Shown: positions 1-61,431 of the stretch, piece after piece
Layout: each line of letters starts with the position of its first letter
Position numbering within the stretch: position 1 is the stretch's first letter
From: Octopus sinensis
Taxonomy: Eukaryota
Direction: 5' to 3'
Length of the DNA stretch: 64,000 nt
NCBI RefSeq assembly: GCF_006345805.1
Contig: NC_042999.1
Coordinates: forward strand, 149,668,001 to 149,732,000
Position numbers and translations under genes: made by a program
The notes under the pieces: generated by a model
What the model was told of the DNA's origin: nothing
What the model saw: the letters and a program-made list of their open reading frames with translations, nothing else
The model's database searches: none

Positions 1-286
1 TATGACTTAGTGTTATTCGACTCACCATCGCAAGGTCATGAGTTCGATTCTCGGCGGCGCCTGGTGTCCTTGAGCAAGACATTTTATTTCACATTTCCCC
101 GGTCCACTCAGCTCTCAAAAATGAGAGTACTTGTATTTCAGAGGGTGTGCCTTGTCACATATTACGTGTCATGCTGAATCTCCCTGAGAACTATGTAAGA
201 GGTACGCGTGTTTGGAGTTTTCAGCCACTTGCCCGTTAATTTCATGAGCATGCTGTTCCGTTGATCGGATCAATACTCGTCGTCGT
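1..286 (+). mobile_element. tRNA-derived SINE (head cut by window edge) carrying the SINE-C 3' module
   Basis: B-box-like GAGTTCGATTC at ~40, then GTGTCCTTGAGCAAGAC; the 3' half (CATGCTGAATCTCCCTGAGAAC...GTTGATCGGATCAA) matches 31540-31720 and the reverse complement of 19925-20090. Confidence 0.8.
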
Positions 287-632
287 TGTGAGTTCAAATT
301 CCGCCGAGGTCGACTTTGCCTTTCATCCTTTCAGGGTCGATAAATTAAGTACCAGTTATGCACTGGGGTCGATGTAATCGACTTAATATATATGTCTATC
401 CTTGTTTGTCCCTTCTATGTTTAGCCCCTTTTGGGTAATAAAGAAATAGGTATTTCGTCTGCCGTTACGTTGTGAGTTCAAATTCCGCCGAGGTCGACTT
501 TACCTTTCATCCTTTCGGGGTCGATAAATTAAGTACCAGTTACGCACGAGGGTCGATGTTATCGACTTAATACCTATGTCTGTCCTTGTTTGTCCCTTCT
601 ATGTTTAGCCCCTTGTGGGTAATAAAGAAATG
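287..632 (+). mobile_element. SINE-B tandem dimer, 5'-truncated
   Basis: Two copies of the core plus tail ending AAAGAAAT; internal junction AAAGAAATA|GGTATTTCGTC at 449. Confidence 0.9.
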
Positions 633-962
633 GGTAAGTTATACTGGGTCTCTGCTGTAAAGTGTCTTTGTTATGGACAGTGCACCACACCAGAGATACA
701 TTAAGGTCTATTGATCTTCGGTTGGTAGTTTGAGACTCGAGCAACTCAGCCGACTGTATCTCTCATTAGGCTTTCGTTAAGGTAAAAGTTATCGATCCGA
801 TTAATTGCTCTCTTTTTGCTGTAGTCAAGGAGAGAGAGGGCTGTTACGCTTTATAGAGAGCCAACAGCTGTTCAGAGCTAAAATGTACTTCTTCCTATGT
901 AATTCTATCATACGCGTCACCTAGAATGTAGCTGTTTGTATACAGCTATGTTGCTGCTAACG

Positions 963-5534: not shown

Positions 5535-5904
5535 TACTTTTCTACTCTAGGCACAAGGCCCGAATTTTTTAGGGAGGTGGGGAAGTCGATTAGATCGACC
5601 CCAGTACGCAACTGGTACTTAATTTATCGACCCCGAAAGGATGAAAGGCAAAGTCGACCTCGGCGGAATTTGAACTCAGAATGTAAAGACAGACGAAATA
5701 CCAATTTCTTTACTACCCACAAGGGGCTAAACATAGAGTGGACAAACAAGGACAGACAAACGGATTAAGTCGATTATATCGACCCCAGTGCGTATCTGGT
5801 ACTTATTTAATCGACCCCGAAAGGATGAAAGGCAAAGTCGACCTCAGCAGAATTTGAACTCAGAACGTAGCGGCAGACGAAATACCTATTTCTTTACTAC
5901 CCAC
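5535..5904 (-). mobile_element. SINE-A plus SINE-B tandem array
   Basis: Core repeated twice; junctions GAAATACC|AATTTC at ~5702 and GAAATACC|TATTTC at 5886. Confidence 0.9.
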
Positions 5905-6072: not shown

Positions 6073-6574
6073 ATAATATTGTTATTTAGCCTCAAATCAG
6101 TCCTGATACTGCAAACCTGTCATCAAAGACATTCAAACCTTCAGCAAACCTATCTTTTTAGGGATAATCTAGGACATTGCGTACAATGGGCGTGTGATTT
6201 AGGTAGGATGATACTTTGGCTGCTATTTTTTGCGTGTCGAGTGACCAGGTAGAGGCTCTTTCATTGGTTCGATTGCGTGATGAGAGTTTTTTTACTTATA
6301 CTTATATATGTAATATGCATATATACCATCGGCAGAAGTTAGAGGGTAAGTCAAAAGCTGAGAGTTTCGTGTATTGGCACTTATCAAACACGAATTTGTC
6401 CATTGTCACTCTGTAACTTCTGACGAAATAACTTCTAAAATGCAAAATTTTGTCAAAAACGTTAAGAGTAAACCCTGTTCTATGTGACACATTTTACCAG
6501 TATCGGAAGTTTGAAAGTATTTAGTTTTAAAAAATTCATGAAATAATCTGTACGTCTAATAGAATAAATCGGAA

Positions 6575-7212
6575 ATGGATGAAAGGCAAAGTCGACCTCG
6601 GCGGAACTTGAACTCAGAACGTAAAGACAGACGAAATACCGCTTCTAAAATACAAAATTCTAAAATACAAATTTTTTTCAAAAACGTTAAGTCGATCTAT
6701 CCTAGTACGCAAATGGTACTTAATTTATCGACCCAAAAGGATGAAAGGCAAAGTCGGCCTCAGCGGAATTAGAACTCAGAACGTAAAGACAGGCGAAATA
6801 CTTATTTCTTCATTGCCCACAAAGGGCTAAACATAGAGAGGACAAACAAGGATAGACAAACGGATTAAGTCGATTATATCGACCCAGTACGTATCTGGTA
6901 CTTATTTAATCGACACCGAAAGGATGAAAGGCAAAGTCGACCTCGGCGAAATTTGAAGTAAAGTCAGACAAAATACCTATTTCTTTACTACCCACAAGGG
7001 GCTAAACACAGAGAGGACAAACAAAAACAACCAAACGGATTAAGTCGATTATATCGACCACAGTGCGTAACTGGTACTTATTTAATCGACCCCAAAAGGA
7101 TGAAAGGCAAAGTCGACCAGGGCGGAATTTGAACTCAGAACGTAACGGCAGACGAAATACGGCTGCGTATTTCGCCCGGCGTGCTAACGTTTGTGCCAGC
7201 TCGCCGCCTTAG
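6575..7212 (-). mobile_element. Four-unit SINE-A/B tandem array
   Basis: Core GGATGAAAGGCAAAGTCG at ~6577, 6739, 6922 and 7098; complete head ends GCCAGCTCGCCGCCTT at ~7210. Confidence 0.9.
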
Positions 7213-12974: not shown

Positions 12975-13405
12975 TTTAAATTCTGGCACAAGACCAGCAA
13001 CTTCGGGCAAGGGGTTAAGTCAATTACATTAATATCAGTGCTCAACTGGTACTCATTTTATCGATCCCGAAAGGATGAAAGACAAAGTCGACCTCTGCCG
13101 AAGTTTAAACTCAGAATGCAAAGACGGACGAAGTTCCGCTAAGCATTTTGCCCTATGTGCTAACGATTCTTATTTCTTTATTGCCCACAAGGGGCTAAAT
13201 ATAGAGGGGACAAACAAGGACAGATAAACGGATTAAGTCGATTACATCGACTCCAGTGCGTAACTGGTACTTAATTTATCGACCCCGAAAGGATGAAAGG
13301 CAAAGTCGACCTCGGCGGAATTTGAACTCAGAACGCAGCGGCGGATGAAATACCACAAAGCATTTCGCCCGGCGTGCTAACGATTCTGCCACATCAACGC
13401 CTTAA
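12975..13405 (-). mobile_element. SINE-A with a SINE-B joined at its head
   Basis: Two cores; junction GCTAACGATTCT|TATTTCTTTATTGCCC at ~13170. Confidence 0.85.
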
Positions 13406-17692: not shown

Positions 17693-17796
<104 letters not shown>

Positions 17797-17802
17797 TATT
17801 CT

Positions 17803-18240: not shown

Positions 18241-18289
18241 AAAAAAGGTCCACTCCACCAAAGTGACCTGGGGATAAACAACATCTATA

Positions 18290-18931: not shown

Positions 18932-19011
<80 letters not shown>

Positions 19012-19029
19012 ATGTATGTGTGTGTGTGT

Positions 19030-19920: not shown

Positions 19921-20283
19921 CGTGGCACTCCGTCGGTTGCGACGACGAGGGTTCCAGTTGATCTGCTCGTGAAATTAACGTGCAAGTGGCTGAGCACTCC
20001 ACAGACACGTGTACCCTTAGCGTAGTTCTTGGGGAGATTCAGCGTGACACAGTGTGAGACAAGGTTGGCCCCTTTGAAATACAGGTACAACAGAAACAGG
20101 AAGAAAGAGTGAGAGAAAGTTGTGGCGAAAGAGTACAGTAGAGTTCGCCTCCCCGCCCCTACTGCCGGAGCCTCGTGGTGTTTTCGCTCAATAAACACTC
20201 ACAACGCCCGGTCTGGTAATCGAAACCGCGATCCTATGACCGCGAGTCCGCTGCCCTAACCACTTGGCCATTGCGCCTCCACG
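19921..20283 (-). mobile_element. SINE-C, full length
   Basis: Head reverse complement ...CCATTGCGCCTCCAC; imperfect 10-bp TSD ATTTTTATGT (19911-19920) / ATTTATATGT (20284-20293). Confidence 0.9.
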
Positions 20284-20805
20284 ATTTATATGTACGGAGC
20301 TAAGAATAGCTGCATCTGTGTGTGTGTGTGTGTAAATGTTTAAGTATTTGTGTACAATATGAGTAAAATATGTGTATATTTGAATGTGCTATGTAGCGAG
20401 TTTATATGTTTATGTGTCATGGGAGTGAATGTGTATCTGAGTCCTCAACCCTTTTTTTCCTATGCATCCCTTTGATTCCTGTTTAATCGGGTGGACCTTC
20501 ACAGCCATTCGATGTTTTAAGAAAATCCTATTATATTTTTAGACATTAAATATTCTTTTATTCTTTTATTTGTTTCAGTCATCTAACTGCAGCTGTGGGT
20601 CACCGCCTTTAGTCGAACAAATCGACCCTAGGACTTATTCTTTGTACTTTGTATTCTAGTACTTATTCGACTTATTTTCTTTTGCTGAACCGCCAAGTTA
20701 CGGGGAAGTAAACACACCAGCATCGGTTGTCAAGCGATGGGAGGGGAGGGACAAACACGCGCACACGCACACACACACACACACACACACATACACATAC
20801 ACATA

Positions 20806-22424: not shown

Positions 22425-23365
22425 TTTCTATTATAGACATAAAACCTGAAATTTAGAGGGAAGGGGATCATTCGACTACATCAACCCCCGTGCACAGCTG
22501 GTACTTTTTTTATCGACTCCAAAAGGATTAAAGGTAAAGTCGAATTCGGAAGCATTTGAAGTCTGCGCATAAAGACGGACGAAATGCCGCTAGGCATTTT
22601 GTCCGGCGTACTTAACGATTTCACTGGCACGCTGCCTTAATAAAAATCCTTTCTTATTTCTTTATTGCACACAAGGGGCTAAACATAAAGGGGGACAAAC
22701 AAGGACGGACAAACGGATTAGGTCGATTATATCGACCCCAGTGCGTAACTGGTACTTAATTTATCGACCCCGAAAGGATGAAAGGCAAAGTCGACCTCGG
22801 CGGAATTTGAACTCACAACGTAACGGCAGACTAAATACCGCCTAGCATTTCATCCGACGCGCTAACGTTTCTGCCAGCTCGTCGCCTTTATTTTATTTTT
22901 TTTTTTTTTTGGCGAAATTTGAACTCAAAATTTACCTATTTCTTTACTACCTACAAGGGGGTAAACACAGAGAGGACAAACGGATTAAGTCGATTATATC
23001 GTCCCCAGTGTGTAACTGGTACTTATTTAATCGACCCCGAAAGGATGAAAGGCAAAGTCGACCTCGGCGGAATTTGAACTCAGAACGTAAAGACAGACGA
23101 AATACCGCGATGCATTTCGCCCGGGGCGCTAACGTTTCTGCCAGATCCTATAACCCTTTCTATTATAAGCGAGAAGAATTCTGTGGGGACCCCAGTACTT
23201 ACATCGACCCCGGTACTTAACTGGGGACTTTATTTTATCGACCCCAAAATACTGAAATGCAAAGTTGACCTCGGGGCAGTTTGAACTCAGGGCGTGAAGA
23301 GTCGGAGTAAATGCTACTAAGCATTTTGTCCGACGCGCTAGCGATTCTGCCAGCTCGCCGCCGTT
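22425..23365 (-). mobile_element. Cluster of four SINE-A/B copies (A 22425-22640, B 22655-22890, B 22909-23145, A 23190-23365)
   Basis: Four cores, all on the minus strand. Confidence 0.9.
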
Positions 23366-28590: not shown

Positions 28591-28836
28591 AAGTATTAAG
28601 TATTAAGGCGGCGAGCTGGCAGACACGTTAGCGCGCCGGGCGAAATGCGTAGCAGTATTTCGTCTGCCGTTACGTTCCGAGTTCAAATTCCGCCGAGGTC
28701 GACTTTGCCTTTCTACCTTTCGGAGTCGATAAATTAAGTACCAGTTACGCACTGGGGTCGATGTAATCGACTTAATCCCTTTGTCTGTCTTTGTTTGTTC
28801 CCTCTATGTTTAGCCCCTTGTGGGTAGTAAAGAAAT
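28591..28836 (+). mobile_element. SINE-B, full length, flanked by a ~90-105-bp direct repeat
   Basis: Head at 28605, tail AAAGAAATA at ~28836; identical 50-bp core in the flanks at 28541-28590 and 28878-28927. Confidence 0.92.
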
Positions 28837-28944
28837 ATATACATACATACATACATACATACATGCATGCATGCATGCATACCTGCACACATGCATATAT
28901 ACATGCATGCATATATACATACAGTATGTGTGCGCGCATGTACA

Positions 28945-29985
28945 TAATTGTATGTTAGGCTGTCAGATGATTTTGTTGTTTTTTCTCCCCATTTATTTTA
29001 ATCCTTATCTTTCTATCCACAATTTCAACAAATCAGTCAATAATATATATTCTGTTTCTTTATTACCCACAAGGGGCTAAACATAGAGGGGACAAACAAG
29101 GACAGACAAGCGGATTAAATCGATTACATCGACCCCAGTGCGTAACTGGTACTTAATTTATCGACCCCGAAAGGTAGAAAGGCAAAGTCGACCTCGGCGG
29201 AAATTGAACTCAGAACGTAACGGCAGACGAAATACGGCTACGCATTTCGCCCGGCGTGCTAACGGTTCTGCCAGCTCGCCGTCCTATCAGTCAATAATGT
29301 ATATTCTCCTTCATCGCTCACGACTTCTTGCCAACGTTCCACCTACATGTCAATACCTTGACAATAGAAATCATCGGGTCTTAATTAGAATGATTCATCG
29401 AACCACGTTTTCAGTTCTACGTTGTTTCTCAACGAAACACCTCGCAGACTGTTGGAAAGCTACCGATAAAACGTGATAATCTGAAAGCTCTATATCGGAA
29501 GAACACGGCAGGTGCGGTTGAAGCTTTCGCTCGAACTCTGGAAATGCATTTTTAGTCAAATCAGTAACGTAGAGCGAGCATTGTCCTGTTGAAGGACCAT
29601 TCTGTATCGCTGGTCGAATCATTTCAGCTGAGTTGCTCATCGAGTGAACGCGACGGGTGACTGTATCATGAAAGTATCTCATTTGCTGGGCCAATTCCCA
29701 GATGGAATGGTACGGATCCTCGTAGATGAACTGATTCAATTGATCCTCATTCAACTGAATGGGTCATCAGGAATATGGTCATAAGTAACAGTGCCTTTTT
29801 ATCTACACAGCACAAATGTCTCGAGCGGTTTTGTCAGCTTTGGGGCCTTGACTGAAAGCGAACAGAAGAAGAAGCCGAAAATACACATTGTTTCTACTTC
29901 GAACCTCATATCATACGCCAGGAAAGAGAAGAGATGATTCTTTTTTTTTTTTCAAATTTCAAAAACGATAAACAAAAGCTGTATT
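28945..29985 (-). mobile_element. Decayed, internally deleted mariner interrupted by SINE-B
   Basis: EDPYHSIWELAQ; PCSSDIELSDYH (decayed YSPDIAPSDYH); VERWQEVVSDEGEY; ends approximate. Confidence 0.7.
29053..29285 (-). mobile_element. SINE-B, full length, 21-bp TSD
   Basis: ATCAGTCAATAAT(A/G)TATATTC at 29032-29052 and 29286-29306. Confidence 0.93.
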
Positions 29986-32559: not shown

Positions 32560-33359
32560 CTTGGTTGTGATGAGGAAGATGAAAACATTTTGGAAACAGT
32601 CATAACAGGTGGCGAATCGTAGGTCAAAGGTTATGGCCACGAGACAAAAGTTCAGTCTTCGCAATGGAAGACCCCCACCCCCACCCGACAAGACTTTAAG
32701 ACGTCAAGGAAATCCAAGAAAATGCGATGCGGTAACTGCTCGCTGTCCTTCAAAAAAGGAGTTCCAGGAATGCTTCCATCCATGGAAACGACCCTGATTA
32801 AAGTGTGTGACTTTTGAAGGGGTGAAACTTCAAACGAGATCAAATTGCCGAATTGATAGGTATTGTATGATAGGTATTGAAAAGGCAGCGAGCTGGCGGA
32901 AATGTTAGAACTCCGGGCGAAATACTTTACGGTATTTCGTCTGCCGTTACGTTCTGAGTTCAAATTCCACCGAAGTCGACTTTGCCGTTCATCCTTTCGG
33001 GGTCGATTAAATAAGTACCAGTTACGCACTGGGGTCGATATAATCGACTTCATCCGTTTGTCTGTCCTTGTTTGTCCTCTCTATGTTTAGCCCCTTGTGG
33101 GTAATAAAGAAATAGGTATTTCGTCTGCCACTACGTTCTGAGTTCAAATTCCACTGAGGCCGACTTTGCCTTTCATTCTTTCGGGGTCGATTAAATAAGT
33201 ACCAGTTACGCACTGGAGTCGATATAATCGACTTAATCCGTTTGTCTGTCCTTGTTTGTCCTCTCTGTGTTTAGCCCCTTGTGGGTAGTAAAGAAATAGG
33301 TATTGTATGATAGTTTTCTTTTTATAGCACTTGTCCCAATACTTTTTGACCAGTCCTCG
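32560..33359 (+). mobile_element. Internally deleted mariner (irritans-like) interrupted by a SINE-B dimer
   Basis: DENILETVITGGES*VKGYGHETKVQSSQWK; KKEFQECFHPWKR; right TIR GTCCCAATACTTTTTGACCAGTCCTCG|TA at 33333-33361. Confidence 0.75.
32874..33298 (+). mobile_element. SINE-B dimer with a 15-bp TSD
   Basis: GGTATTGTATGATAG at 32859-32873 and 33299-33313; internal junction AAATA|GGTATTTCG at 33115. Confidence 0.92.
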
Positions 33360-34344: not shown

Positions 34345-34892
34345 CATACATACATACATGCATGTATGCATTTATACACATACACATGTACATACATAGA
34401 TAAGTATTTATAAATATCTGTACACAAACACATATATGTATACATATACAGAGGTCCACAAAAAGTGTATACACACTTTAACAGCTGATTGCTCGCTTAA
34501 TTTTCACTTCATTTTAGATTTAGACCATTAGAAAGAATGAAGCCAGACTAAGCGTTGAACAAAGGAAATTTGTTCAAAAGTATTATTGCAAGGACAGTTT
34601 AGTGGGTAATTTTAAACAGATCCATCTACGTGACTTATCGTCACTCACATTAGAGATAAGTTTCAAACAGATGGAACGATTCAGTATGTCCATAGGAAAT
34701 TTAGTATTGGAAATGGATTTTTAGAGTTCGAGAAAAGCAGGTTGTCAAATACGAATTTGAAAATCAAGCGTCTGTCACATTTTGAAGTACTGTCATTGGA
34801 AACGCTACATACCAAGAACAGTCCGATACTTTCAATGAAGATGATGATTGTGTGTGTGTGTGATGGTTTTCAACTTGATTTTGATTATATAT

Positions 34893-35122
34893 TTCTCTAC
34901 TACCCACAAGGGGCTAAACACAGAGGGGACAAACAAGGACAGACAAACGGATTAAGTCGATTACATCGACCCCAGTGCGTAACTGGTACTCAATTTATCG
35001 ACCCCGAAAGGATGAAAGGCAAAGTCGACCTCGGCGGAATTTTAACCTAGAGAGTAACGGCAGACGAAATACGGCTACGCATTTCGCCCGGCGTGCTAAC
35101 GATTCTGCCAGCTCGCCGCCTT
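34893..35122 (-). mobile_element. SINE-B, full length
   Basis: Tail TATTTCTCTACTACCCAC through head GCCAGCTCGCCGCCTT. Confidence 0.9.
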
Positions 35123-48761: not shown

Positions 48762-49302
48762 CTAATTATTATTCTTTCATTAGCCACAAGGGCTCACATA
48801 CAATAACATTAAAGGCCATGCAACAACATAAAAACGGAGCGATACAATAGGTTTTCCGCGTGTGAACAATATAAATTAACAATTAAAATTGAACAAATTA
48901 AAACTCCCAATAGGGGAAGCGGTTTAACCCTTTAGTGTTCAGATTACTCGGTTAAATGTAATACTTTTCCACTCAAATGTTTTGAATTAATCATGCATTA
49001 TCTTATATCTTTGAGGTTTCAATGATGTGATTGTTTATATTTAGAATGACATTGTCGGGTAGGTGTGAGAGGCCAGATATTGCCAGTTTGAATATAAAAC
49101 AAGTAGAATATCTGGGCCAGATATGGCCGGTTTAAACACTAAAGGGTTAAGGTACTCGTGGAAAACCTAGAAAAGCCACGGGTGCCTGATCAACAGGGTA
49201 AGAGCCCGTCTCCTTTAATTCTCTTTTTATAGGTGCACGCTCAGAATTGGTTCTATCACGCTGGCCATTCTTCCAACATTCACCCACCTTTCAACAAACT
49301 TG
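48762..49302 (-). mobile_element. Tx1/L1-like LINE 3' end (ORF2 C-terminus plus 3' UTR) interrupted by a MITE
   Basis: FVERWVNVGRMASVIEPILSVHL* with the stop at 49227-49229; 3' end GAGCCCTTGTGGCTAATGAAAGAATAAT; clade assigned from recalled similarity. Confidence 0.6.
48928..49146. mobile_element. piggyBac-type MITE, 219 bp
   Basis: TTAA|CCCTTTAGTGTT ... AACACTAAAGGG|TTAA. Confidence 0.92.
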
Positions 49303-49577
49303 CTATAATAATTGGTGCGTTGGGAACAGTAATCTGAGGAATAGACAGATGGCTGAAGGGGATTGAAACAGACTGCCTGGTAGAGCTCCTACAGAAAGTT
49401 TGCCTCTTAGGGGCAGCAAGGATTATCAGGAGGGTTCTAAGCACTTGAAAGACTACTGGAAACGTGTGCATACCTAAGGTTACAGGTAGTAACCCGCAAC
49501 CTCATAAATCCTACCAGGAATAAGACCAAACCTGAACTTTGTTTCTATAATAATGATGATGATGATAATAATAATAA
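49303..49577 (+). mobile_element. R4/Dong-like RLE LINE 3' end with (TGA/TAA)n tail
   Basis: IIIGALGTVI...LLQKVCLLGAARIIRRVLST*. Confidence 0.85.
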
Positions 49578-50124
49578 TAATAATAATGGCAGTGGCTCTC
49601 ATGGCTTCTGATCTTAACTGATTGGAAGTGTTATCATGTACATTGTTTTGTCTTGGTATAAAAGATGGGCTACAGCAAATATTCTGCTCAATACCACAGA
49701 TTTGCTTGTCAGTTGTTTGACCTTAACCAGTTGAGCATGTCCCTTAGTGGCTGACGATATGTGCATCTCTGATCACGAGCAGAAGTAGTGGGGGAGCATC
49801 ATAGCCATGTGTTGAGAGGGATTCTTTGGGGTTTGAATAGTTCACCTCTGGAAACATGGGTGGTTCTTTCAACATCCTTAAACAACCCTTATTCAGGGAC
49901 CGTTTGAGCGGGATGGGCTACTCAACCTGAAGAAAATTCTAACTGGGCCCCACCTGCAAGGTCATGTGCTGTTTATCTTGATATAAGATCACCATGTCGC
50001 GCACATATGGTTGTGATGCATGTGCCTGGTGTACCTTTATCAGACGGGTAGTCATGATGGGTATATTGGGCTTCGTATATTTTACCCCAGTGTCACTTTG
50101 ATGGCATGAACTGCTCTCTCACTC

Positions 50125-50163
<39 letters not shown>
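49577..50163 (+). mobile_element. Family F element with (AAT)n tail
   Basis: ~550 bp lying between two (AAT)n tracts; ends CTCTCACTC(AAT)n. Confidence 0.85.
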
Positions 50164-50530
50164 CCTTTCTACTATAGGTACAAGGCTTGAAACGTTGGGG
50201 GAGGGGACCAGTCGATTAGATCAACCGCAGTACGCAACTGGTACTTAGTTTATTGGCCCCGAAAGGAATGAAAGGCAAAGTCAACTTCGGCGGAATTTGA
50301 ACTCAGAACGTGAAGACGGACGAAATACCTATTTCTTTATTACCCACAAGGGGCTAAACACAGAGGACAAACAAGGACAGACAAACGGAGTAATTCGATT
50401 ATATCGACTCCAGTGCGTAACTGGTACTTAATTTATCGACCCCGAAAGGATAAAAGGCAAAGTCGACCTTGGCGGAATATCCACCAAGCATTTCGCCCGG
50501 CATGCTAACGACTCTGCCATCTCGCCGCCT
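50161..50530 (-). mobile_element. SINE-A plus SINE-B array
   Basis: Junction CGAAATACC|TATTTC at 50329; further SINE-A copies at 50545-50700 (minus) and 50990-51205 (plus). Confidence 0.88.
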
Positions 50531-52835
50531 TAAGCTCAGCGATACATTAATCCTTTCTACCATAGGGACAAAAAAAATCCCTGGAATTTTGTGGGAGGGA
50601 GTTGGTCGACTGCATTGATCCCAGTGCTCAACTAGTAGTTATTTTATCAACCCCGAAAGGTTGAAAAAGGTTGAGTCGATCTCGTCGCAATTTGAATTCA
50701 CCTAGTCTTTCTTCCTTGGAACTGCAATGATTCTATAAATACAGGTTATAAAACCTTGTGTATTTATAGAATCTATCTCCAGATGAGCCATCTCATTTCA
50801 CTTATTTTCGAGATCGTACGTGCGATATTTTGGGTGAGGCCAATAATTGATTAGTCTAGAGAAGGATAGGCTCGGGAATACAGTCATAGATTTGCAAATA
50901 CACTTTTAAGGTTTCATGAATAATTTTGTCGATAGATGACTGCACAGTCTGTGGAGCAACGGGCGGAATTCTTTGCGATACTTAAGTTCTTTCAGAGGCG
51001 GGAGCTGACAGAATCGTTAGCAAAATGCTTAGCGGCATTTCGTCTGTCTTTACGTTTTGAGTTCAAATTCTGCCGACGTTGACTTTGCCTTCCATACTTT
51101 CGAGATCGATAAAATAAATACCAGTTGAGCACTGGGGTTGGTGTAATCAACATACTCCCTCTCCTGAAACTTCTGGTCTTGTGCCCAAATTTGAAACCGA
51201 TTTTTTAAGTCTCTTTGAACTTTGAATTCAAAATCTAGCTTGAAGCTGCTTTTTCTCCTCCTGGGGTTCAATACTGAGGCTGACGTTTTAGCTAAGTATT
51301 TTTCTCTTCACATTTATGAGCTATGTGCCTTTAAATACATGATAAATCTGATAGGCCATCAATGGAAGCTGGAAACTTAAGAAATAATAAATAACCTTCT
51401 TTCGTCTTTATGCCAAAAAATATTATTTTGTCTTTAATGTCTCATGGAAAAACATTTCTGCGTTTTTCATTTCTCACTGTCTTCTTTGAAGCTCACTTTC
51501 TCTTCTCTTCGTCTCTTATTTTCTTTTCCTCTAAGATTCATGCCAACTCCAATTAATCCCCCCCTTTCCTCTCCTTTTCTCCAAGATGAGAGAGAGAGAG
51601 AGAAAGAGATAGAAAGGGAGAGAAAGAGAGAGAAAGGGAAAGAGAGAGGGACAGAGGGCAAACGAGTGAGAGAGAGCAAGCGAGTAAGAGAGAGAGCAAA
51701 CAAGTGAAAGAAAGAGAGAGAGAGAGGAAGAGAGAGAGAGAGAGATGGGGCAAGCAGTTTCCGCTACACTAAGTTTCGAATCCTAGTTGTAGAAAACCAG
51801 TACCAAACATCTGTGTAATGTAGAAAAAAAATACATATAAAGAAAACAACGGTCTCTCCCTCTATCCATCTTTTTTTCTCTCTCTCTCTCCCTTTTTTCT
51901 CTCTCTTCCTCTTTTTTCTCTCTCTCAACCTCTCACCCTCTTTTTTCTCTCTATTCCTCTCTATCTCTATATCTATCTCGTTTCTCTTTCTCTTTATCTC
52001 TCTGTTTGTTTGTCTCTGTCTCTCTGTCTCCCATAAGAAAAGCAAATTCAGTTTTTCTTCCCTTTTACTTGATCTGTTTTCTGTCTTCCCTTTTAAATCC
52101 TCCTCTCTCTCTCTCTCTCTTTCCTTCTAAAGCTTCCTTCTCCCTTTCTCTCTCACTTATTTCATTTACTTTATCATTTCTCACCTCACGTCTCCTTCTC
52201 CTCCTCTCTCTCTCTTTCTCTCTCTCACTCACTCACTCTCTCTTTCTCTCTCTATCTTTCCTTTTTTATTCTGTGGTAAAAAAAAATAAGAAAAAAAAAG
52301 TCAAGAAAAACGACGACGCCAAAGCGGAAAGAAATGCCAGGTGCAGGTGTCTCCTTTTCTACCAGTGTCTGATGTCGCTGCAATGGCAATTTGCTATTGT
52401 TCAAAACGCGCATTTTGAGTTGCGTTGATCTGCTGTCGCTGCAGTTGCTTCTTGCTCTCTGCAGATATGGAACATGGAATTGTTTGCTACTATTGATTGA
52501 GAGAAGGTGGTGGCGGAGCGACAGAAACGATAGGCAGTCAGGTTTAAATGCCTCGCGGTACGTATTTACTGACGTTGCGAGTTCAATTCTCGCTGCAGCC
52601 AACTATTTTTGCATCTTAGGTTTCTGATGTCGTTAAAGCAAACAAAAACAAAAAAAACTACTAGAAACAATTTGAATTACAGACTTCTCCCTACCTTACA
52701 AAATTTTACCTGTGTTAGAATTCGTAATAATTAACGGAAAAGAACCAGTAGAGTGGCAGAAACGGTAGAGCTATTGGTTCACAAAAGGTGTGCCGCCGCA
52801 AGAAAATATAGACACATCACGGATTTATAAAGATA

Positions 52836-53880
52836 CTTGCAGAGATACCCGGCGTTGCCCGGTTACATTCAATTGAAAAATTAGACTTTTCTGTTATATT
52901 TTCTGAATGAACTGGAATATCTGTTTCGAATTTCATCAAAATTGCAGATGAGGGTTATTTCCCTCTTTACACACCCTAAAAATTGTAATCGTGCCACATG
53001 GAAACCAAAAGACGAATGATCACAATAAGCAGTCAGTTACCCTACCCTTGTCGTTACCACTCCCAATGTAGGATTCCTCACCATCCAGGTGACAGGCACA
53101 GCCGTAAGATGCATTACGAATCTATAGCAATTGGAAGGGCGTGACCCAACTGAAATCAACATTAACAATTGTGTGACGTGAGGGCTTAGGAGAAATTAAA
53201 GTGTCACCTCTGGAGTTTGCAAATGACCACTATACTGATACGTAACTGGACAGAATGAATTTAAAATCTATAAATGTCTTTGAATAACCAGTCACTCATC
53301 TGGGAAGGCCTTGTGATCAATGTTACCATCTGGGGACTATGTGTGACCGAGTGATAATAAAAAGACTGAAAGGAGGTCTGCAATCAAATAACTTTACTCA
53401 ACACTTTGCAGCTGAATCAGTGGAGACAAAGATGCCTCTCATTTACTTAACAATTTATGCACCACATTGCAGAAATCACAATGTAAGTGTATGTCAAAGC
53501 AAACTGTTACACAGTTGTACCGTTGAATTAGAAATAATGCCCAACTTTTATGCTCGGGTAACCCTACAGCTTCCAAGAGCACAACTGTATTCGTTTTTGC
53601 TTAGATAAAATGACAAAATTGTGGGTGTTAAGTCCCCATGGAAGGGTCTTTCTAACTTTGTAAGAAGATGAAATTTCATAAATATTACTCCATTTGTGTC
53701 TAATAGCTATGGTTAAAATTTCATCAACTGCAAAAATATACGAATTGTCATGGTGGTTATGGCCCTTAAGCTTAGAATATAATTTCCAAATTTCCTAAAG
53801 ATCCATTCAGTACTTTTGACCTAGTTCTGGATCATAAAAGAAATTACTAAAATTTGGGAGTTAAGGCTCCCATTATGGTG

Positions 53881-53929
<49 letters not shown>

Positions 53930-54159
53930 GGAATGGCCTTAATAGGCCATTCAACTCACTAAAACGAGCAGCTAAACTCAAACCGCTAAATAGTAGTAAT
54001 TCAGCTGCTCTTTTTAGTGAGTTGAATGGCCTATTAAAGCCATTCCTTAATATTATTGTTGAATATATATTATATAGTCTTTTGACTATTTTTTCTTTCT
54101 CACTAGACCGCTGGTGGCGAAAATAATTTCTATTGAATTTTTTGCTACCCTTATATTGA

Positions 54160-54224
<65 letters not shown>

Positions 54225-54232
54225 ATATATAT

Positions 54233-54237
<5 letters not shown>
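52836..54237 (-). mobile_element. Possible non-autonomous Helitron/Helentron-like element; 5' extent uncertain
   Basis: A|CTTGCAGAGATACCCGGCGTTGCCCGG is the reverse complement of a hairpin plus CAAG (CTAG with one change); candidate 5' TC at (TA)nGA|T 54237. Confidence 0.45.
53930..54046. mobile_element. 117-bp fold-back MITE with TTAA TSD and GG termini (Kolobok-like)
   Basis: TTAA|GGAATGGCCTTAATAGGCCATTCAACTCACTAAAACGAGCAGCT ... AGCTGCTCTTTTTAGTGAGTTGAATGGCCTATTAAAGCCATTCC|TTAA; 2 mismatches between arms. Confidence 0.85.
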
Positions 54238-54319
<82 letters not shown>

Positions 54320-54583
54320 CACACACACACACACACACAAAGATAAATTGATAGATACAACTGAGTGGGCAAACAAAAATATGAGACACAGCCTAGTGCT
54401 TTTTTATGTTGATTAGTTTGTTCCTGTGAAACCAGTAAGTTTTGTGGATGTAAATAAATGAACAGCAGTTGTGAAGCAGTGATGAGGGCGAAACACAGAC
54501 ACAAAGACACACACATACACTTACATATATGCATATATATACGATTGATTTGTTTCAGTTCCTGTCTACGAAATCCATATATA

Positions 54584-57314
54584 TTGTTGTTGGCATCCTT
54601 TTTGTCACGAGAGACAATGGAGTTGCGCATCAAATAATCTAGTCCGGCTTTTACATTTCATGTCCTAATACATCTCCTGCTGTGGATGTGTAGTCCTATC
54701 CAGTACAACCACTCCCTCTGGCAGGTGCCGCAAATGTAGCGAAGACTTTGCCTGGCTGGTTGTAATGTCATACTTTCTTATTGACGTCTTTTCTTGTCTT
54801 TCTATTTCTCCTCTCCCTCTATGTCACTCCTTTGTGTTCCCTCTTTTACGGTAGGTTGCCAATCTCTACGGTTGCTGGCAACTACTTCCCAGTTGGTAAT
54901 ATTGATGTTGCAGGCATTCATGTCCCTTTTGCAAACATCCTTGTATCGTAAGAACGGTCTTCCCACAGACCTAGTGCCCCTAGCAAGCTCTCCGTTGAGT
55001 ATGTCGTTGGGGATTCTGCCATATTCCATACGGCTAACATGTCGAAGCCATCTCATACGTCTTTCTGTGAGGAGTGTAAACATGCTTGGTATTCCTGCTT
55101 GCTTGAGGACATCTTTGTTGGGGACATGATTCTGCCATTTAATGCGAAGGATTTTCCGGAGGCAGCGCAGGTGAAAGATATTTAGGCGACGTATGGCGTC
55201 GTATGGCGTGTGTATGGCGTCCAAGTCTCACTTCCATACAGTAGATTGCTAAGTACACATGCTCGGAAAATCTTCAATTTTGTGGTCTTGGTCAGCTTAT
55301 TGTTGTCCCATGCCCGTTTGGAGAGTTGGGCCATCACAGCAGCTACCTTGCCAATGCGTATATTGAGCTCAGTATCAAGGGATAGGTTGTAGGTGACGGT
55401 AGAGCCAAGATAGGTAAACTTCTCCACCTCCTGTAGTCTGTGGTCTCCAATATGTATGTTTGGGATAGTCGATGTCACCTGGCCCATGATGTTGGTCTTC
55501 TTGAGGCTGATAAATAAGCCAAAGTTGCCACATGCTTGCTCAAAACAGTTGATTAGCCTTTGTAGGGCTTCTTCTGTGTGTGATACCAGAGCGGCATCAT
55601 CAGCAAATAGCATCTCCTTGATGAGGACGCTTCTGATTTTGGTCTTGGCACGCAAACGCGAGAGATTGAACAGTTTCCCATCACTTCTACTGTGCAGAAA
55701 CACTCCATCATCTGATGTCACAAAGGCATGTGACTGCAGTGGCGAGAAGAAGATGCCAAATAATGTAGGAGCAAGGACACAACCTTGCTTTACCCCATTT
55801 TTTATTTGGAAGGCGGCTGATGTTGAACCATTGTGCTGTATGGTGCCTTGCATATCATCATGGAAAGATGTGATGATCCTCAGCAGCTTTGGTGGACGTC
55901 CGATTTTTTGGAGCATGATGAAGAGGCCTTTTCTACTTACCAAGTCAACGGCCTTTGTCAGATCAATGAAGGCCATATATAATGGCATTTTCTGCTCTCT
56001 GAACTTCTCCTGAAGTTGGCGTATGGAGAATATCATGTCAATAGTTGATCTGCTTCTTCTAAAGCCACACTGCGATTCTGGATAAATTCGAGAAGCAAGC
56101 AGTTGCAGCCTGGACAGGATAATGCGAGCAGAGGTCTTTCCAACAGTGCTTAGAAGAGATATTCCACGGTAATTGTTACAATCACCACGGTCACCTCTGT
56201 TTTTGTAAACCGTAATGATGTTAGCATCCCGCATATCTTGAAGGACTGTACCCTCCTCTCAACACTGACACAGAAGCTCATGAATGTGCCGAAGCAGGAT
56301 GGTGTTTTTGCCGGTTTTGATGATCTCAAATGGGATGCCGTCTTTTTCCGGAGCCTTGTTACTTGCTAGGGAGTCAATAGCCTTGGTGAGCTCTGCTATA
56401 GATGGCAGACTGTCAAGTTCACACATGACTGGCAAGATCTTGACACCCTCGATTGCAGCCTCAGCTACCGTGGTCTCTCGTGAGTAGAGATGCTGGTAGT
56501 ACTCCACCCATCTATCCATTTGCTTGCTTTGGTCCTTGATGAGATCCCCAGTAGTTGATTTCAGAGAGGCTGACTTGGATGCGGATGGACCGAGGGCCTT
56601 CTTCAAACCGGCATACATCCCACGGGTGTCGCCACTGTCAGCAGCTGACTGGATACTCTGACAGATTTCCTGCCAATACCTATTTGCACAGCGTCTGGCA
56701 GTCAGTTGGGTTTTATTTCTTGCCTTTCTGAGTTCTTCGAGTGACTTTATAGAAGAATCACTCTTGTATTACATCAGAGCTGCACGCTTTGTTTCGATAA
56801 GTGTTTCCAGCTCTGAGAGCCCAGCACTGAACAAAATCTGGGTTTTGCCTTTCTCTCATGCTGAAAGTATCTATTGATGTGGTATACAAAGCTTCCCTGA
56901 TATAATTCCACCTACTTTCAGCAGAGGGGTTTGGGCAGCTACTGAGGGCAACTTTGATAGAAACAGCAAAACATTTTCGCAGTGTAGGGTCGGGGGTTCT
57001 GGCAGTGTTAATGCGTGGTCGGCCCATTTTCTTGGAGTGATGGACTTTTTAGGCAGAATCCTCACCCTGCTTCTTATTAGTGAATGATCTGTGTCACAAT
57101 CCGCGCTGTGGTAACTACGAGTCAGTTGAACAGAATTCAGAAAGGGTCTTCGTGTAATGATGAGATCCAGCTGATGCCAGTGGTGAGATCTTGGATGTCT
57201 CCAAGATTCCTTATGGGATGTCTTGTTGGCAAAGAATGTGTTAGTGATGCACAGGTTATGGTATGTGCAAAATTCAAGTAGTCTCTGGCCATTGTCATTC
57301 ATGTTGCCAATACC
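54584..57314 (-). mobile_element. RTE-clade LINE, 5'-truncated, frameshifted APE-RT ORF
   Basis: ORF pieces 56871-57332 (APE: GNMNDNGQRLLEFC, HQLDLI, DTDHSL), 56259-56618, 55182-56234 (RT: GVKQGCVLAP, LFADD, FTYLGS) and 54802-55224; CxxC...GLHIHSRRC motif at 54667-54738; tail GGATGCCAACAACAA. Confidence 0.95.
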
Positions 57315-57543
57315 TATTTCTTTATTACCCACAAGGGGCTAAACATAGAGGGGACAAACAAGGACAGACATAGGTATTAAGTCGATTACATCGACCCAGT
57401 GCGTAACTGGTACTTAATTTATCGACCCCGAAAGGATGAAAGGCAAAGTCGACCTCGGCGGAATTTGAACTCACAACGTAACGACAGACGAAATACCGCT
57501 AAGCACTTCGCCCGGCGTTCTAAGGTTTCTGCCAGCTCACCGC
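57315..57543 (-). mobile_element. SINE-B, full length, fused to the 5' end of the RTE
   Basis: Sense junction AAAGAAATA|GGTATTGGCAACATG; head abuts the duplicated flank at 57543. Confidence 0.92.
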
Positions 57544-57616
57544 ATACACTTACATATATACATACATATATATACGATCGATTTGTTTCAGTTCCTGTCT
57601 GCAGAATCCATATATA

Positions 57617-57656
<40 letters not shown>

Positions 57657-57661
57657 TATAT

Positions 57662-57694
<33 letters not shown>

Positions 57695-58220
57695 ATGCAT
57701 ACACATACATACATACATATATATTTGGAATTTACAAAAGAAACGAACAAAAGACGAAGACGGGTGTGTAAACAGCAAACAGGTTTATTAGTTTAACGCT
57801 CCGGACTTAGGAATATTTATATAGGGAGTACTACTAATTTTAAAATTAGATATAGGGGACACAAGAATTCATTTATTCACCCCTATATAAAAAATTACTG
57901 ACATTTTAGTATGTTGTAAGCATAAATATTTAGCGTCTTATAATTTTCTTAAACTTTAAAATATAATTTTTTAGAATATAAAAGCTTTTTGAAAATACGG
58001 TCCAATTAGATCATTAGATCCAATGAACACTTATGCACAAACCTGTAATCTTAAATTATTTTTTTTTTTAGTAGTATATATCAGTACATTGGAATATTCC
58101 AATTGGCTATTATTTGCATGATTAACTAAAGTTAACCTTTCAATGATTTTCATTTCTTATTTAAACGTGGTATTCCTCTTGAAATCGTCAGGACCTGATA
58201 TAATGCTGTCACTTATTCAT

Positions 58221-59862
58221 TTCGAAGTCGTGAGTTAAATTTTGTTACTGCGTTGCACGTTAGTTTTGTTGAGCGTTTTTTGTTGTGCGGTTACACGGTA
58301 TTTGTCTGTCTGTGTCGAGACGGACAGGGACGGCCCCTCCCTGATGGGAGAGACGGCATGAGTGTTCGAGACCCTATCGGACTTGTCTGCGTCTGAGGAG
58401 GAGTTGGAGGAAGCGGTGGAAGGAATGGACCGGAAATTGGGTGATGCTTGTGCTGGAGTGGCCGGGGAGTCGGAGGAGAGAGAGTTGGACTTGGCCGGGC
58501 TGCCAAGTTGCCAGAAGTTTGTCAGGAAGGAGGGCGGTGAGGTGGAGTTGGCACCGCCACCAAGGCGTAGAGAATGGTACGAGGTGGGGACCATTGCATA
58601 CAGGGTCTATGTGGGCGGAAGGAGAGGGGTCGAAGTGGTGAATGTGGAATGGATGGAGGGGGCTCTGAGAAGAGCGGAGGAGGGGATAGCATTTCTGACA
58701 GGAGGTGTAAGCTGCGGTGCTATGGTGGTGCAGTTCGGGAGTGAAAATGTAGCAAGAAGGATGGCGGCGAGGGCAGTGAAGTCTGAGAGGGTGTTCCTGT
58801 TGCCCTCGTACCTAAACAGGAAGATCACTAGAATAGGGGTGGGTGGAGGGAGTGTCCCCAAGTGTCGAAGCTGAATGGATTGTGGCGGCTATGATTGGCG
58901 GTCGTGAGAAGGAGGTGGACATCCTCCACGCCACGGTGAAGATCGAGGGCTGGAGGGGCGCAACGCTGGACTTGAATGTGCAAGCGGAGGATGAAGTGCT
59001 GGAGAACCTGACGAGGAATATCAGAGTGGGAGGCGTGATCATGAGAGTGTGGGTCGAGGGCAGAGCTCCACGCTGTTACAAGTGTGGCCTGCGAGGGCAC
59101 ATAAGAGCTAACTGCCCTCCCCCAGAGAAAAATATGGATGCGGAACCACAAAGAGAGGCGGAAAAAGAGCAGAAACCAGAAGAGAAAGAGACAACAGAAG
59201 AAGAAGAGGCTTCAAAAGAATGGGAAGAAGCCAGGAAAAAGAGGAAGAGAAGAATAAGAGGAAAAGCAAACAGTACGGAACCCCAATCCACCCCAACACC
59301 ACCCATACCCTCTAAGTCCCACCCTCTCCCGGCAGACAGTGAACCCACCCGCTCCCCTCCAACAAGAAAACAGAAAAGAAAAGACACACACAACCAAGAT
59401 ACAAAAAATGAACCCAGGCCCAACATTGTATGTATGACGGGAAAGGAAAAGATTAAAAAGACAATGGAAGAATATCAATGGTGTGACAGAGGACCGATCA
59501 GATATGCAGTAATTGGAAAAGAACGAATGGACGAGTTTATGGTAATGTGTGAAAGGGAGGATTGGAAAGTAAGTGAAGTGAGAATGGTCGAAAAAATTAT
59601 GAGGGATTTGGAAGAGACGTTTGAAAGAAGGATGGAGATGGAAGGATTTTGTATATGAACTGAACAAGGAGCATTTGTGTGGGATTAATAACTAAAGGAC
59701 AGGTAAGTGATGCTAACAGATGGGGCCGTTAGCATCACTTTCATAATATTATTTTCAAAATTCATCTTTCATATCTATGTATCTGTGATGTTCTATGTCC
59801 CCAATGTCTTGTAGTGTCCCCTCTGTGTGGCCCCTAGTGGGCAATAAAGAAAAGTCAGTACC
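58221..59862 (+). mobile_element. ORF1-only non-autonomous Tx1/L1-type retroelement (HAL1-like), complete
   Basis: 17-bp TSD TGCTGTCACTTATTCAT at 58204-58220 and 59863-59879; single gag-like ORF; AATAAA at ~59843; no endonuclease or RT sequence. Confidence 0.88.
58344..59658 (+). pseudogene. ORF1-like nucleic-acid chaperone (~438 codons) with a CCHC zinc knuckle; one nonsense codon and one frameshift
   Basis: ATG at 58344 is in frame with ORF 58362-58874 but TGA occurs at 58359; +1 shift near 58850 joins ORF 58843-59658; RVWVEGRAPRCYKCGLRGHIRANCP fits CX2CX4HX4C. Confidence 0.8.
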
Positions 59863-60100
59863 TGCTGTCACTTATTCATCGATACTCAAAAACTGAACTT
59901 TCACCAACTGAATAGTCACCATGTAGTACCTTACTGCTTTTTGTTGGATTTTACCTCGAGAAAGGAGGGCTGAATTTTGAATACTTCGTACAACCACTTT
60001 TCTGAAACGGCTGCAGGTTAGGGAAAAAATTTTAATCGCCTCTTTCAATTTAGGTTTTTATTTTTCATGTTTATATTCGTATTTCATGGTTATGTTTATA

Positions 60101-61077: not shown

Positions 61078-61245
61078 TTACGTTCTGAGTTCAAATTCCG
61101 CCGAGGTCGACTTTGCCTTTCATCCTTTCGGGGTCGATAGATTAAGTACCAGTTACGCACTGGGGTCGATGTAATCGACTTAATCCGTTTGTCTGTTCTT
61201 GTTTGTTCCCTCTATGTTTAGCCCCTTGTGGGCAGTAAAGAAATA
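61078..61245 (+). mobile_element. SINE-B, 5'-truncated, 7-bp TSD
   Basis: TATATTA at 61074-61080 and 61246-61252. Confidence 0.9.
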
Positions 61246-61431
61246 TATATTAATTTAGCATTAGAATTCTTCAAGTTGTATAAATATTGTTTGCATCATT
61301 CGAAAGAGAAATAAGTTTTGCATAAGGTGTAAAAGATATAAATAATTTGTATGGTGTTAGTAACAAAATATTTGGTAAGAAATAGAACTTTTATCGTCGG
61401 TCTTAAATATATTTTCGCCGGTGTATATATC

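What the first reader, a model, noticed from the sequence alone, without database searches (positions are those of the whole stretch)
48762..59853. One 3' recognition motif shared by a Tx1-like LINE, the ORF1-only element and SINE-B: candidate three-tier retroposon system
Seen in sequence: the ORF1-only element ends TGTCTTGTAGTGTCCCCTCTGTGTGGCCCCTAGTGGGCAATAAAGAAA (59805-59853). SINE-B ends TGTCCTTGTTTGTCCCCTCTATGTTTAGCCCCTTGTGGGYAATAAAGAAATA (about 80% over ~50 bp; over a dozen copies in the window). The ORF2-bearing remnant at 48762-49302 ends GAGCCCTTGTGGCTAATGAAAGAATA. All keep a small GCCC-loop-GGGY stem before the AATAAA-like signal. Established: SINEs often share 3' tails with the LINE whose RT recognises them, whereas mammalian L1 relies on poly(A). 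Inference: a stringent-type Tx1/L1 RT mobilises both a half-LINE and a very abundant SINE through this stem-loop.
Basis: partly seen in the sequence, partly recalled or inferred. Interest (0 to 1): 0.85.

Follow-up and report, generated by a model that had tools for sequence, protein, structure and literature searches.

The report
Octopus SINE, half-LINE and LINE share tail
An abundant octopus SINE and a 1.6-kb element that encodes only a LINE ORF1 end in the same ~45-base sequence as a full-length L1/Tx1-type LINE found in other octopus genomes, an ordinary kind of LINE/SINE partnership but a new example with a "half-LINE" as a middle tier.

Summary
The core observation holds. The ORF1-only element (58223-59852, flanked by a target-site duplication, TSD) and 16 SINE-B copies in the window end in the same ~45-nt module: TTGTnnTGTCCCCTCTnTGT, then GCCC-CTWGT-GGGY, then AATAAAGAAA. 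Local alignments score z = 16-18 against shuffles, and other LINE 3' ends in the window score at chance.

The missing piece, an autonomous LINE with this tail, exists. Through ORF1 homologues I reached O. vulgaris and O. sinensis loci holding 5.28-kb LINEs. Each has ORF1 and ORF2, and the ORF2 carries an APE endonuclease, RT and zf-RVT domains. One ORF2 is an intact 1132-aa reading frame, with E = 2e-71 to human L1 ORF2p. All end in the tail, and it matches SINE-B better (41/45) than the ORF1-only tail does.

LINE and ORF1-only copies sit head to tail at one repeated target sequence. SINE-B copies are dispersed.

Three parts are not supported:
- The "ORF2-bearing remnant" (48762-49302) shows no detectable ORF2. 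It contains a piggyBac-like MITE and shares only ~28 nt of the tail.
- The 4-bp stem is no more stable than shuffled sequence and covaries only modestly.
- Tx1 clade membership rests on target preference and the literature, not on a phylogeny.

Trans-mobilisation is inferred. Verdict: partly supported; a new member of a known kind.

The parts
58223..59852 (+). ORF1-only retroposon ('half-LINE'), 1630 bp: 5'UTR, frameshifted ORF1, 194-nt 3'UTR, no ORF2
   Evidence: TSD-bounded. 71-77% nt identity to a 1691-bp copy in O. sinensis (L002 2495-4185) that has an intact 463-aa ORF. Its ORF1 is 35-40% identical to the ORF1 of the 5.28-kb LINE.
58187..58222 (+). 5' copy of the target-site duplication (cgtcaggacctgATATAATGctgtcacttattcat)
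   Evidence: Read directly. Matches 59853-59879 apart from an 8-nt gap and one mismatch.
59853..59879 (+). 3' copy of the target-site duplication
58362..58874 (+). ORF1, N-terminal part (frame A)
   Evidence: Aligns to residues 2-178 of the intact L002 ORF (49% identity).
58843..59658 (+). ORF1, C-terminal part (frame B). CCHC knuckle at about 59071-59118, a basic low-complexity stretch, then a conserved C-terminal domain.
   Evidence: zf-CCHC 19.6 bits, just under the 20.8 cut-off; 131 homologues.
59707..59738 (+). 3'UTR hairpin: 11-bp perfect stem, loop AGAUGGGGCC
   Evidence: Hairpins with a UGGGG(C/U)C loop but different stems occur in the L003 ORF1-type element and in the LINE 3'UTRs.
59805..59852 (+). 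Shared 3' tail module of the ORF1-only element (stem-loop GCCC-CTAGT-GGGC at 59830-59842, then AATAAAGAAA)
57311..57543 (-). SINE-B copy used as reference; tail at 57317-57339
   Evidence: 92.8% identity to consensus.
279..636 (+). SINE-B dimer (tails at 424-446 and 608-630)
5583..5886 (-). SINE-B multimer (tail at 5705-5727)
6574..7207 (-). SINE-B multimer (tails at 6805-6827 and 6980-7002)
13171..13400 (-). SINE-B, full length
22655..23147 (-). Two SINE-B copies (tails at 22657-22679 and 22939-22961)
28608..28837 (+). SINE-B, full length
29052..29281 (-). SINE-B, full length, with a TSD of about 20 bp (AATATAyATTATTGACTGAT)
32890..33305 (+). SINE-B dimer (tails at 33090-33112 and 33274-33296)
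34890..35119 (-). SINE-B, full length
50324..50478 (-). SINE-B, 5'-truncated, with the tail at 50332-50354. It is followed by a unit carrying a different tail type.
61078..61251 (+). SINE-B, 5'-truncated
48770..49290 (-). Unclassified 3' remnant whose last ~28 nt resemble the tail (AGCC-CTTGT-GGCT AATGAAAGAATA, then a TAA/TAG microsatellite). Interrupted by a MITE at 48928-49146. No ORF2 detected.

Best explanation
A family of 5.3-kb L1/Tx1-type LINEs ends in a ~45-nt 3' module. Each LINE has ORF1 and an ORF2 with APE endonuclease, RT and zinc-finger domains. The module contains a small hairpin, GCCC-CTTGT-GGGY, followed by AATAAAGAAA.

Two non-autonomous families carry the same module at their exact 3' ends. 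One is a 1.6-1.7-kb element that keeps only a diverged ORF1. The other is the very abundant ~235-bp SINE-B.

The most likely mechanism is stringent-type target-primed reverse transcription. The LINE's ORF2 protein binds the 3' module on whichever RNA carries it. It then starts cDNA synthesis at the A-rich end.

Shown: the shared terminal sequence; the existence and coding capacity of the LINE; homology of the two ORF1s; TSDs; precise 3' ends without poly(A); and the common insertion target of the LINE and the ORF1-only element.

Inferred: that ORF2p recognises the module; that the hairpin is the recognised feature; and that this particular LINE lineage, rather than a close relative, drives SINE-B.
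For: Tail identity and significance:
- 17 motif matches against 0 expected.
- blastn SINE-B versus LINE tails: 88-96% over 26-43 nt, E down to 8e-9.
- Local alignments: SINE-B versus LINE 37/39, 40/44 and 41/45 identical (z = 19-22); SINE-B versus ORF1-only 42/47 and 35/40 (z = 16-18). Control LINE ends score z below 1.
- The loop base separates two lineages. It is CTTGT in SINE-B and in all five distinct LINE tail variants sampled, and CTAGT in the window and L002 ORF1-only copies (CGTAGT in L003).

Autonomous partner:
- L001 6058-9456 is an uninterrupted 1132-aa ORF2 with Exo_endo_phos, RVT_1 and zf-RVT domains. It scores E = 2e-71 to human L1 ORF2p over residues 3-868.
- ORF1 lies directly upstream, and the units end in the tail.
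- All three tiers co-occur in one O. sinensis locus: SINE-B at L002 422-768, the ORF1-only element at 2495-4185, and LINE units from 4213.

ORF1-only family:
- L002 holds a perfect 16-bp TSD and an intact 463-aa ORF.
- The ORF1 protein family is widespread: 131 hits, 28 of them at 1e-10 or better.

Shared target:
- The window element and LINE unit 1 of L002 are inserted at the same position, CACTTATTCAT^.
- Pieces of the same target sequence flank or space arrays in L001, L002 and L005.

Precise ends:
- SINE-B copies stop at ...GAAATA whatever follows.

Literature:
- Tail sharing and stringent recognition are established (PMC3747384).
- Tx1 elements with target preference that mobilise SINEs are known (PMC4494074).
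- O. vulgaris has 13 recently active L1-Tx1 families with 421 insertions averaging about 5.4 kb (PMC13282606).
Against: - SINE-B insertions are dispersed in AT-rich sites with 10-20-bp TSDs. None lies in the target sequence used by the LINE and the ORF1-only element. If one endonuclease serves all three, its specificity must be loose, or SINE-B uses a related LINE.
- The stem is only 4 bp. Folding energy of the tails is not different from shuffles (z -0.1 to -1.3).
- Covariation rests on one pair changed in two sequences of uncertain orthology; 6 of 500 shuffles reach the observed score.
- No LINE of this family lies in the window, and the window's species is unknown.
- In the O. vulgaris arrays sampled, ORF1 is frameshifted.
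- A more distant relative (39% ORF2 identity, L006) lacks the tail.
Confidence: 0.65

Rival explanations
1. SINE-B is or was driven by a different, dispersed LINE lineage that inherited a related tail. The target-bound array LINE found here is only a cousin, and the window 'remnant' may be a trace of such a lineage.
For: SINE-B sites differ from the LINE and ORF1-only sites. Tail variants exist: the remnant has AGCC/GGCT and L003 has GGC/GCC. The remnant lies in a non-target context and ends in a TAA/TAG microsatellite. The same SINE body also occurs with a second, unrelated tail, so tail swapping happens in this genome.
Against: No such LINE was seen in about 207 kb of octopus DNA. The covariance-model search found no tails beyond those already known. 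The best matches to SINE-B's tail are the array LINEs. The remnant has no recognisable ORF2.
Confidence: 0.22
2. The shared module is a transcript-processing cassette (AATAAA signal and nearby sequence), or was acquired by template switching or recombination. On this view it is not what the reverse transcriptase recognises.
For: The module contains AATAAA. The hairpin is thermodynamically unremarkable. Chimeric retrocopies seem to occur here: the SINE-B + LINE composite at about 54590-57543 is flanked by a 72-nt direct repeat.
Against: A poly(A) signal has no expected role in a short non-coding SINE; SINE-B's pol III origin is assumed, not shown. Genomic copies have no poly(A) tail and end at one defined position. 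The module sits at the exact 3' end of three otherwise unrelated sequences, across LINE subfamilies that are only 71-92% identical elsewhere.
Confidence: 0.1
3. The similarity is chance or low-complexity noise.
For: The tail is short and its end is A/T-rich.
Against: 0 matches are expected against 17 found. Alignment z = 13-22 with 0 of 2000 shuffles as good, and controls score at chance. The position is terminal in every case.
Confidence: 0.01

Closest known systems
UnaL2 / UnaSINE1 of eel, and other stringent-type LINE/SINE pairs
   Same: The SINE and the LINE share a conserved 3' terminal sequence with a small stem-loop. There is no poly(A), and the 3' end of copies is precise. (Background: PMC3747384, PMC4824008.)
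   Different: Those pairs are mostly L2, CR1 or RTE, and UnaL2 recognition has been proven by assay. Here the LINE is L1/Tx1-type, the stem is only 4 bp, and nothing has been tested experimentally.
Tx1-Mar LINEs and SINEU of crocodilians (Kojima 2015, PMC4494074)
   Same: An L1-group LINE with a preferred repeated target. Non-autonomous elements are inferred to use its machinery. Some LINE families carry target-derived 5' sequence; here, L001-type units carry a target-like 5' leader.
   Different: SINEU was linked to Tx1-Mar by shared target preference and shared 5' heads. SINE-B is linked by its 3' tail and does not share the target.
HAL1 (half-L1) of mammals; HeT-A with TART/TAHRE of Drosophila
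   Same: Elements that keep an ORF1/gag-like gene, lack RT and depend on a partner LINE. HeT-A and TART also form head-to-tail arrays. (From my own knowledge, not checked with tools.)
   Different: HAL1 is poly(A)-dependent. HeT-A/TART insert at chromosome ends. Here the ORF1-only family shares a specific 3' module and an internal repeated target with its partner, and a SINE shares the module too.
Stringent-type plant and algal L1 lineages with matching SINEs (Ohshima, PMC3747384)
   Same: L1-clade LINEs with a conserved 3' stem-loop shared with SINEs.
   Different: In the plant case the stem shows clear compensatory changes. Here covariation is minimal.

Membership tests
LINE/SINE partnership by shared 3' tail (stringent type) | SINE and LINE share a homologous sequence at their exact 3' ends | tested here: met
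   37-41 of 39-45 nt identical, z = 19-22, terminal in all copies.
LINE/SINE partnership by shared 3' tail (stringent type) | An autonomous LINE (EN + RT, open ORF2) with that tail exists in the same genome as the SINE | tested here: met
   O. vulgaris: L001 has an intact 1132-aa ORF2 and L005 holds SINE-B copies. O. sinensis: L002 holds all three tiers. This could not be tested for the window's own genome.
LINE/SINE partnership by shared 3' tail (stringent type) | Copies end at a defined nucleotide, without a poly(A) tail | tested here: met
LINE/SINE partnership by shared 3' tail (stringent type) | Conserved 3' stem-loop supported by compensatory changes | tested here: inconclusive
   97.5% of cells are paired, but only one pair changes on both sides, in two sequences; 6 of 500 shuffles reach the score. 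Folding is no more stable than shuffles.
LINE/SINE partnership by shared 3' tail (stringent type) | The 3' module is required for retrotransposition in trans | not testable with these tools
   Needs a cell-based retrotransposition assay.
Tx1 clade of the L1 group | The RT domain groups with Tx1 references in a phylogeny (RTclass1 or Repbase set) | not tested
   No labelled Tx1 reference sequences were available and the names are uninformative. Indirect support: among the LINE superfamilies it lists as recently active in O. vulgaris, PMC13282606 names only L1-Tx1 from the L1 group, with insertions averaging about 5.4 kb.
Tx1 clade of the L1 group | APE endonuclease + RT + C-terminal Cys/His motif; L1-like ORF2 | tested here: met
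   This feature is shared with the L1 clade, so it does not discriminate.
Tx1 clade of the L1 group | Preference for a specific repeated target sequence | tested here: met
   Four loci (window, L001, L002, L005) carry related target sequence at the junctions. Two independent insertions lie at the identical position. The L002 array is built of different subfamilies. The sample is small and was chosen through ORF1 hits.
Tx1 clade of the L1 group | ORF1 with an RNA-binding fold and CCHC knuckle | tested here: inconclusive
   zf-CCHC scores 19.6 bits against a 20.8 cut-off. No Pfam hit for the LINE ORF1. Weak match to the ORF1 part of a fish fused ORF1-ORF2 protein (E = 0.046).
ORF1-only non-autonomous LINE derivative ('half-LINE') | ORF1 homologous to that of an autonomous LINE; no ORF2; same termini; TSD; several copies with the same structure | tested here: met
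   window 1630 bp; L002 1691 bp with an intact ORF and a 16-bp TSD; L003 holds a related copy.
tRNA-derived SINE | 5' head recognisable as a tRNA | tested here: not met
   ARAGORN finds 0 tRNAs in the window. Rfam gives no tRNA match at E of 1 or less over two copies. Only a B-box-like GAGTTCAAATTCC is visible by eye. The element is short, non-coding, TSD-flanked and highly repeated.

The most novel reading that the evidence does not exclude
A target-preferring Tx1-like LINE and its ORF1-only parasite pile up head to tail at one promoter-like repeated sequence, and some LINE subfamilies have taken up part of that target as a 5' leader. One of the most abundant octopus SINEs has borrowed only the LINE's 3' module. 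It has thereby escaped the target restriction and spread genome-wide. On this reading, 3'-end recognition and target choice are separable within one RNP system.
Probability: 0.25. Interest if true: 0.6.

Novelty: new member of a known kind. Interest (0 to 1): 0.45.

Why it matters
SINEs make up about 12% of octopus genomes, and their expansion has been linked to cephalopod genome evolution. I found no paper that names the LINE driving them (PMC9115989, PMC13282606).

A concrete partner LINE, a defined 45-nt module and an intermediate ORF1-only family give a testable system. The tests would ask how an L1-group reverse transcriptase chooses its template, and whether target choice and template choice can be uncoupled.

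Tried and rejected
- The first protein search, with the whole ORF1, gave one hit, probably because low-complexity words filled the candidate list. Its contig was not on record.
- Look-up of the window's own ORF found no record, so the species stays unknown.
- The remnant at 48770-49290 showed no ORF2 by six-frame translation, by tblastn with two ORF2 C-termini, or by blastn against all loci.
- The remnant's tail does not match the second SINE tail type (z = -0.1).
- Rfam found nothing credible for the target sequence or the element. ARAGORN and Rfam gave no tRNA call for the SINE-B head.
- More distant LINE relatives were uninformative. L006 (39% identity) has no such tail, and L007 (58% identity) ends before the tail. 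L005 copies are broken by other insertions.
- A covariance model of the tail found no further variants in 207 kb.
The ZCCHC3/Tx1 literature search was empty.
Full report
**What is in the window.** The window has 39% G+C and is dense with retroposons. Homologues of its proteins come from Octopus bimaculoides, O. vulgaris and O. sinensis, so it is octopus DNA; the species could not be fixed.

SINE-B is a repeat of about 235 bp. Full-length copies are 83-94% identical to their consensus and have TSDs of 10-20 bp in unrelated, AT-rich sites. Its tail motif occurs 16 times in the window (17 matches including the ORF1-only element, 0 expected). Its head has a B-box-like motif, but neither ARAGORN nor Rfam calls it a tRNA.

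**The ORF1-only element.** It runs from 58223 to 59852. It is bounded by a long TSD, 58187-58222 versus 59853-59879, with one copy lacking 8 nt. It therefore ends exactly at ...GGGCAATAAAGAAA.

It carries one ORF broken by a frameshift near 58845. The ORF has a CCHC knuckle scoring just under Pfam's cut-off. A 194-nt 3'UTR follows, containing an 11-bp hairpin at 59707-59738. There is no trace of an ORF2.

Its last ~47 nt align with the SINE-B tail at 42/47 identical, z = 17.9 against shuffles. Two other LINE 3' ends in the window score at chance.

**The 'ORF2-bearing remnant'.** The quoted tail is at 48772-48797 on the minus strand. It keeps the CTTGT loop and a 4-bp stem, AGCC/GGCT. The match to SINE-B covers only about 28 nt (z = 8.9 pairwise), which I estimate is borderline once the whole window is counted.

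The interval has no ORF of 80 aa or more. It shows no similarity to the C-terminus of either LINE ORF2 tested. It contains a 219-bp MITE (48928-49146) with TTAA duplications. From about 49290 rightwards the sequence is a different LINE's 3' end on the plus strand. The remnant may be a distant relative of the tail family, but it is not evidence for an ORF2-bearing partner.

**Finding the autonomous partner.** An exhaustive search with the C-terminal ORF1 piece gave 131 homologues. A profile search then returned annotated octopus proteins on chromosome-scale records. The DNA around two of them showed the tail recurring every ~5.28 kb without any SINE-B body.

Each period is one full LINE. It holds ORF1 (up to 449 aa when intact, L002 14908-16257), then ORF2, then about 250 nt of 3'UTR ending in ...TTGTATTGTCCCCTCTTTGTTGGCCCCTTGTGGGTAATAATAAAA. 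One ORF2 (L001 6058-9456) is open for 1132 aa. It has Exo_endo_phos, RVT_1 and zf-RVT domains and matches human L1 ORF2p at E = 2e-71. A third locus (L004) holds at least four more units.

**How the three tails relate.** SINE-B's tail is closer to the LINE tails (37/39, 40/44 and 41/45 identical) than to the ORF1-only tails (42/47 and 35/40). One loop base is diagnostic. The loop is CTTGT in SINE-B and in all five distinct LINE tail variants sampled. It is CTAGT in the window and L002 ORF1-only copies, and CGTAGT in L003. SINE-B thus took its tail from the LINE lineage, and the ORF1-only family is a separate, older branch.

That fits the ORF1 proteins. The ORF1-only ORF is only 35-40% identical to the LINE's ORF1. 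It is nevertheless intact (463 aa) in an O. sinensis copy with a perfect 16-bp TSD, so the family was active recently without an RT of its own.

**Insertion sites and arrays (new here).** The window element splits a repeated sequence of about 280 bp, made up of 58025-58222 plus 59880 to about 59935. Homologous pieces flank or space the LINE arrays in L001, L002 and L005.

The window element and LINE unit 1 of L002 sit at the same position, after CACTTATTCAT. Units 2-4 of L002 share a second site about 50 nt downstream, each with a repeated CAACTGAATACTCGTCAT-type duplication.

The L002 array is made of subfamilies only 71-92% identical, so it grew by repeated insertion. The L001 and L004 arrays are 99% or more identical and may have grown by duplication. 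L001/L004-type units carry a target-like 5' leader.

This target preference is the hallmark of the Tx1 group (PMC4494074, PMC3747384). O. vulgaris is reported to have 13 recently active L1-Tx1 families whose insertions average about 5.4 kb (PMC13282606). I did not run a phylogeny, so 'Tx1-like' stays a well-motivated label, not a tested membership.

**The weak points.**
- SINE-B does not use the LINE's target. Either the endonuclease is only loosely specific, or SINE-B is driven by a dispersed relative.
- The stem is 4 bp and folds no better than shuffles. On ten tail variants, 97.5% of cells pair, but only one pair shows a two-sided change, and 6 of 500 shuffles reach the observed covariation. 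A covariance model found no further variants in 207 kb.
- A relative at 39% ORF2 identity lacks the tail.
- Mobilisation is inferred from sequence alone.

**Mechanism judged most likely.** This is stringent-type target-primed reverse transcription. ORF2p binds the ~45-nt module on LINE, ORF1-only or SINE-B RNA and initiates at the A-rich end.

The best sequence-level argument is the combination of three facts: three otherwise unrelated RNAs carry the module, all copies end at one defined nucleotide, and none has poly(A). SINE-B also has no obvious use for the AATAAA signal.

**Comparison and verdict.** This is a new example of the well-known LINE/SINE common-tail relationship. It is unusual in involving an L1-group LINE with target preference and in having an ORF1-only middle tier. 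It is not a new kind of system.

Noticed in passing
window 58025-58222 + 59880-~59935; L001 4260-4490; L002 2479-2494, 4186-4212, 9332-9385; L005 8957-9077: A repeated sequence of about 280 bp serves as the insertion target for the LINE and the ORF1-only element. Its upstream part carries ATTTGCAT and TATTTAAA-like boxes about 30 nt before the hot spot. Rfam finds no known RNA gene there, and its identity is unknown.
   Followed up: partly
L001 4445-19184; L004 ~3700-20588; L002 2495-20850; L003 ~8300-10700: Head-to-tail arrays of 5.28-kb LINE units, with ORF1-only elements among them. The L002 array mixes subfamilies that are 71-92% identical, while the L001 and L004 units are 99% or more identical.
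   Followed up: partly
window 279-636, 5583-5886, 6574-7207, 32890-33305, 50210-50478: SINE-B multimers. The tail ...GAAATA is joined directly to position ~64 (GGTATTTCGTCTG) of the next unit, always at the same internal position and with no duplication between units.
   Followed up: partly
window 50150-50210 (-), 50540-50566 (-), 23153-23169 (-): The same SINE body occurs with a second, unrelated tail, ...CCTTGTACCTATAGTAGAAAGGATTA(TTA)n. This suggests tail swapping between LINE partners.
   Followed up: partly
window 54514-57617 (-): A full-length SINE-B (57543->57311) is fused directly to a 5'-truncated APE+RT LINE of another clade (57310->~54590; 28% RT identity to the Tx1-like ORF2). The pair is flanked by a 72-nt direct repeat (54514-54584 / 57543-57617, 88% identical). 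It could be a chimeric retrocopy formed by template switching.
   Followed up: no
window 48928-49146: A 219-bp MITE with TTAA target duplications and 12-bp terminal inverted repeats (CCCTTTAGTGTT), piggyBac-like.
   Followed up: no
window 49290-49590 (+): The 3' end of another LINE (...IIIGALGTV...LLGAARIIRRVL*), ending in an (ATA/ATG)n microsatellite and abutting the minus-strand remnant.
   Followed up: no
window 59707-59738; L003 ~9583-9607; L001 ~9490-9535: A 3'UTR hairpin whose loop keeps UGGGG(C/U)C while the stems differ completely between the ORF1-only and LINE families. It is a second candidate recognition element. SINE-B has GGGGTC twice in its body.
   Followed up: partly
L006 3880-3925 and 9915-9945: A LINE with 39% ORF2 identity from an unidentified ENA assembly is flanked by ATCATTCATC duplications. 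These resemble the octopus insertion site ...TTATTCAT^C, hinting at conserved endonuclease specificity.
   Followed up: no
proteins P0001, P0011, P0033, P0017: Annotated octopus gene models are chimeras that include pieces of this ORF1 family, for example fused to C2H2 zinc-finger arrays or helicase-like sequence.
   Followed up: no
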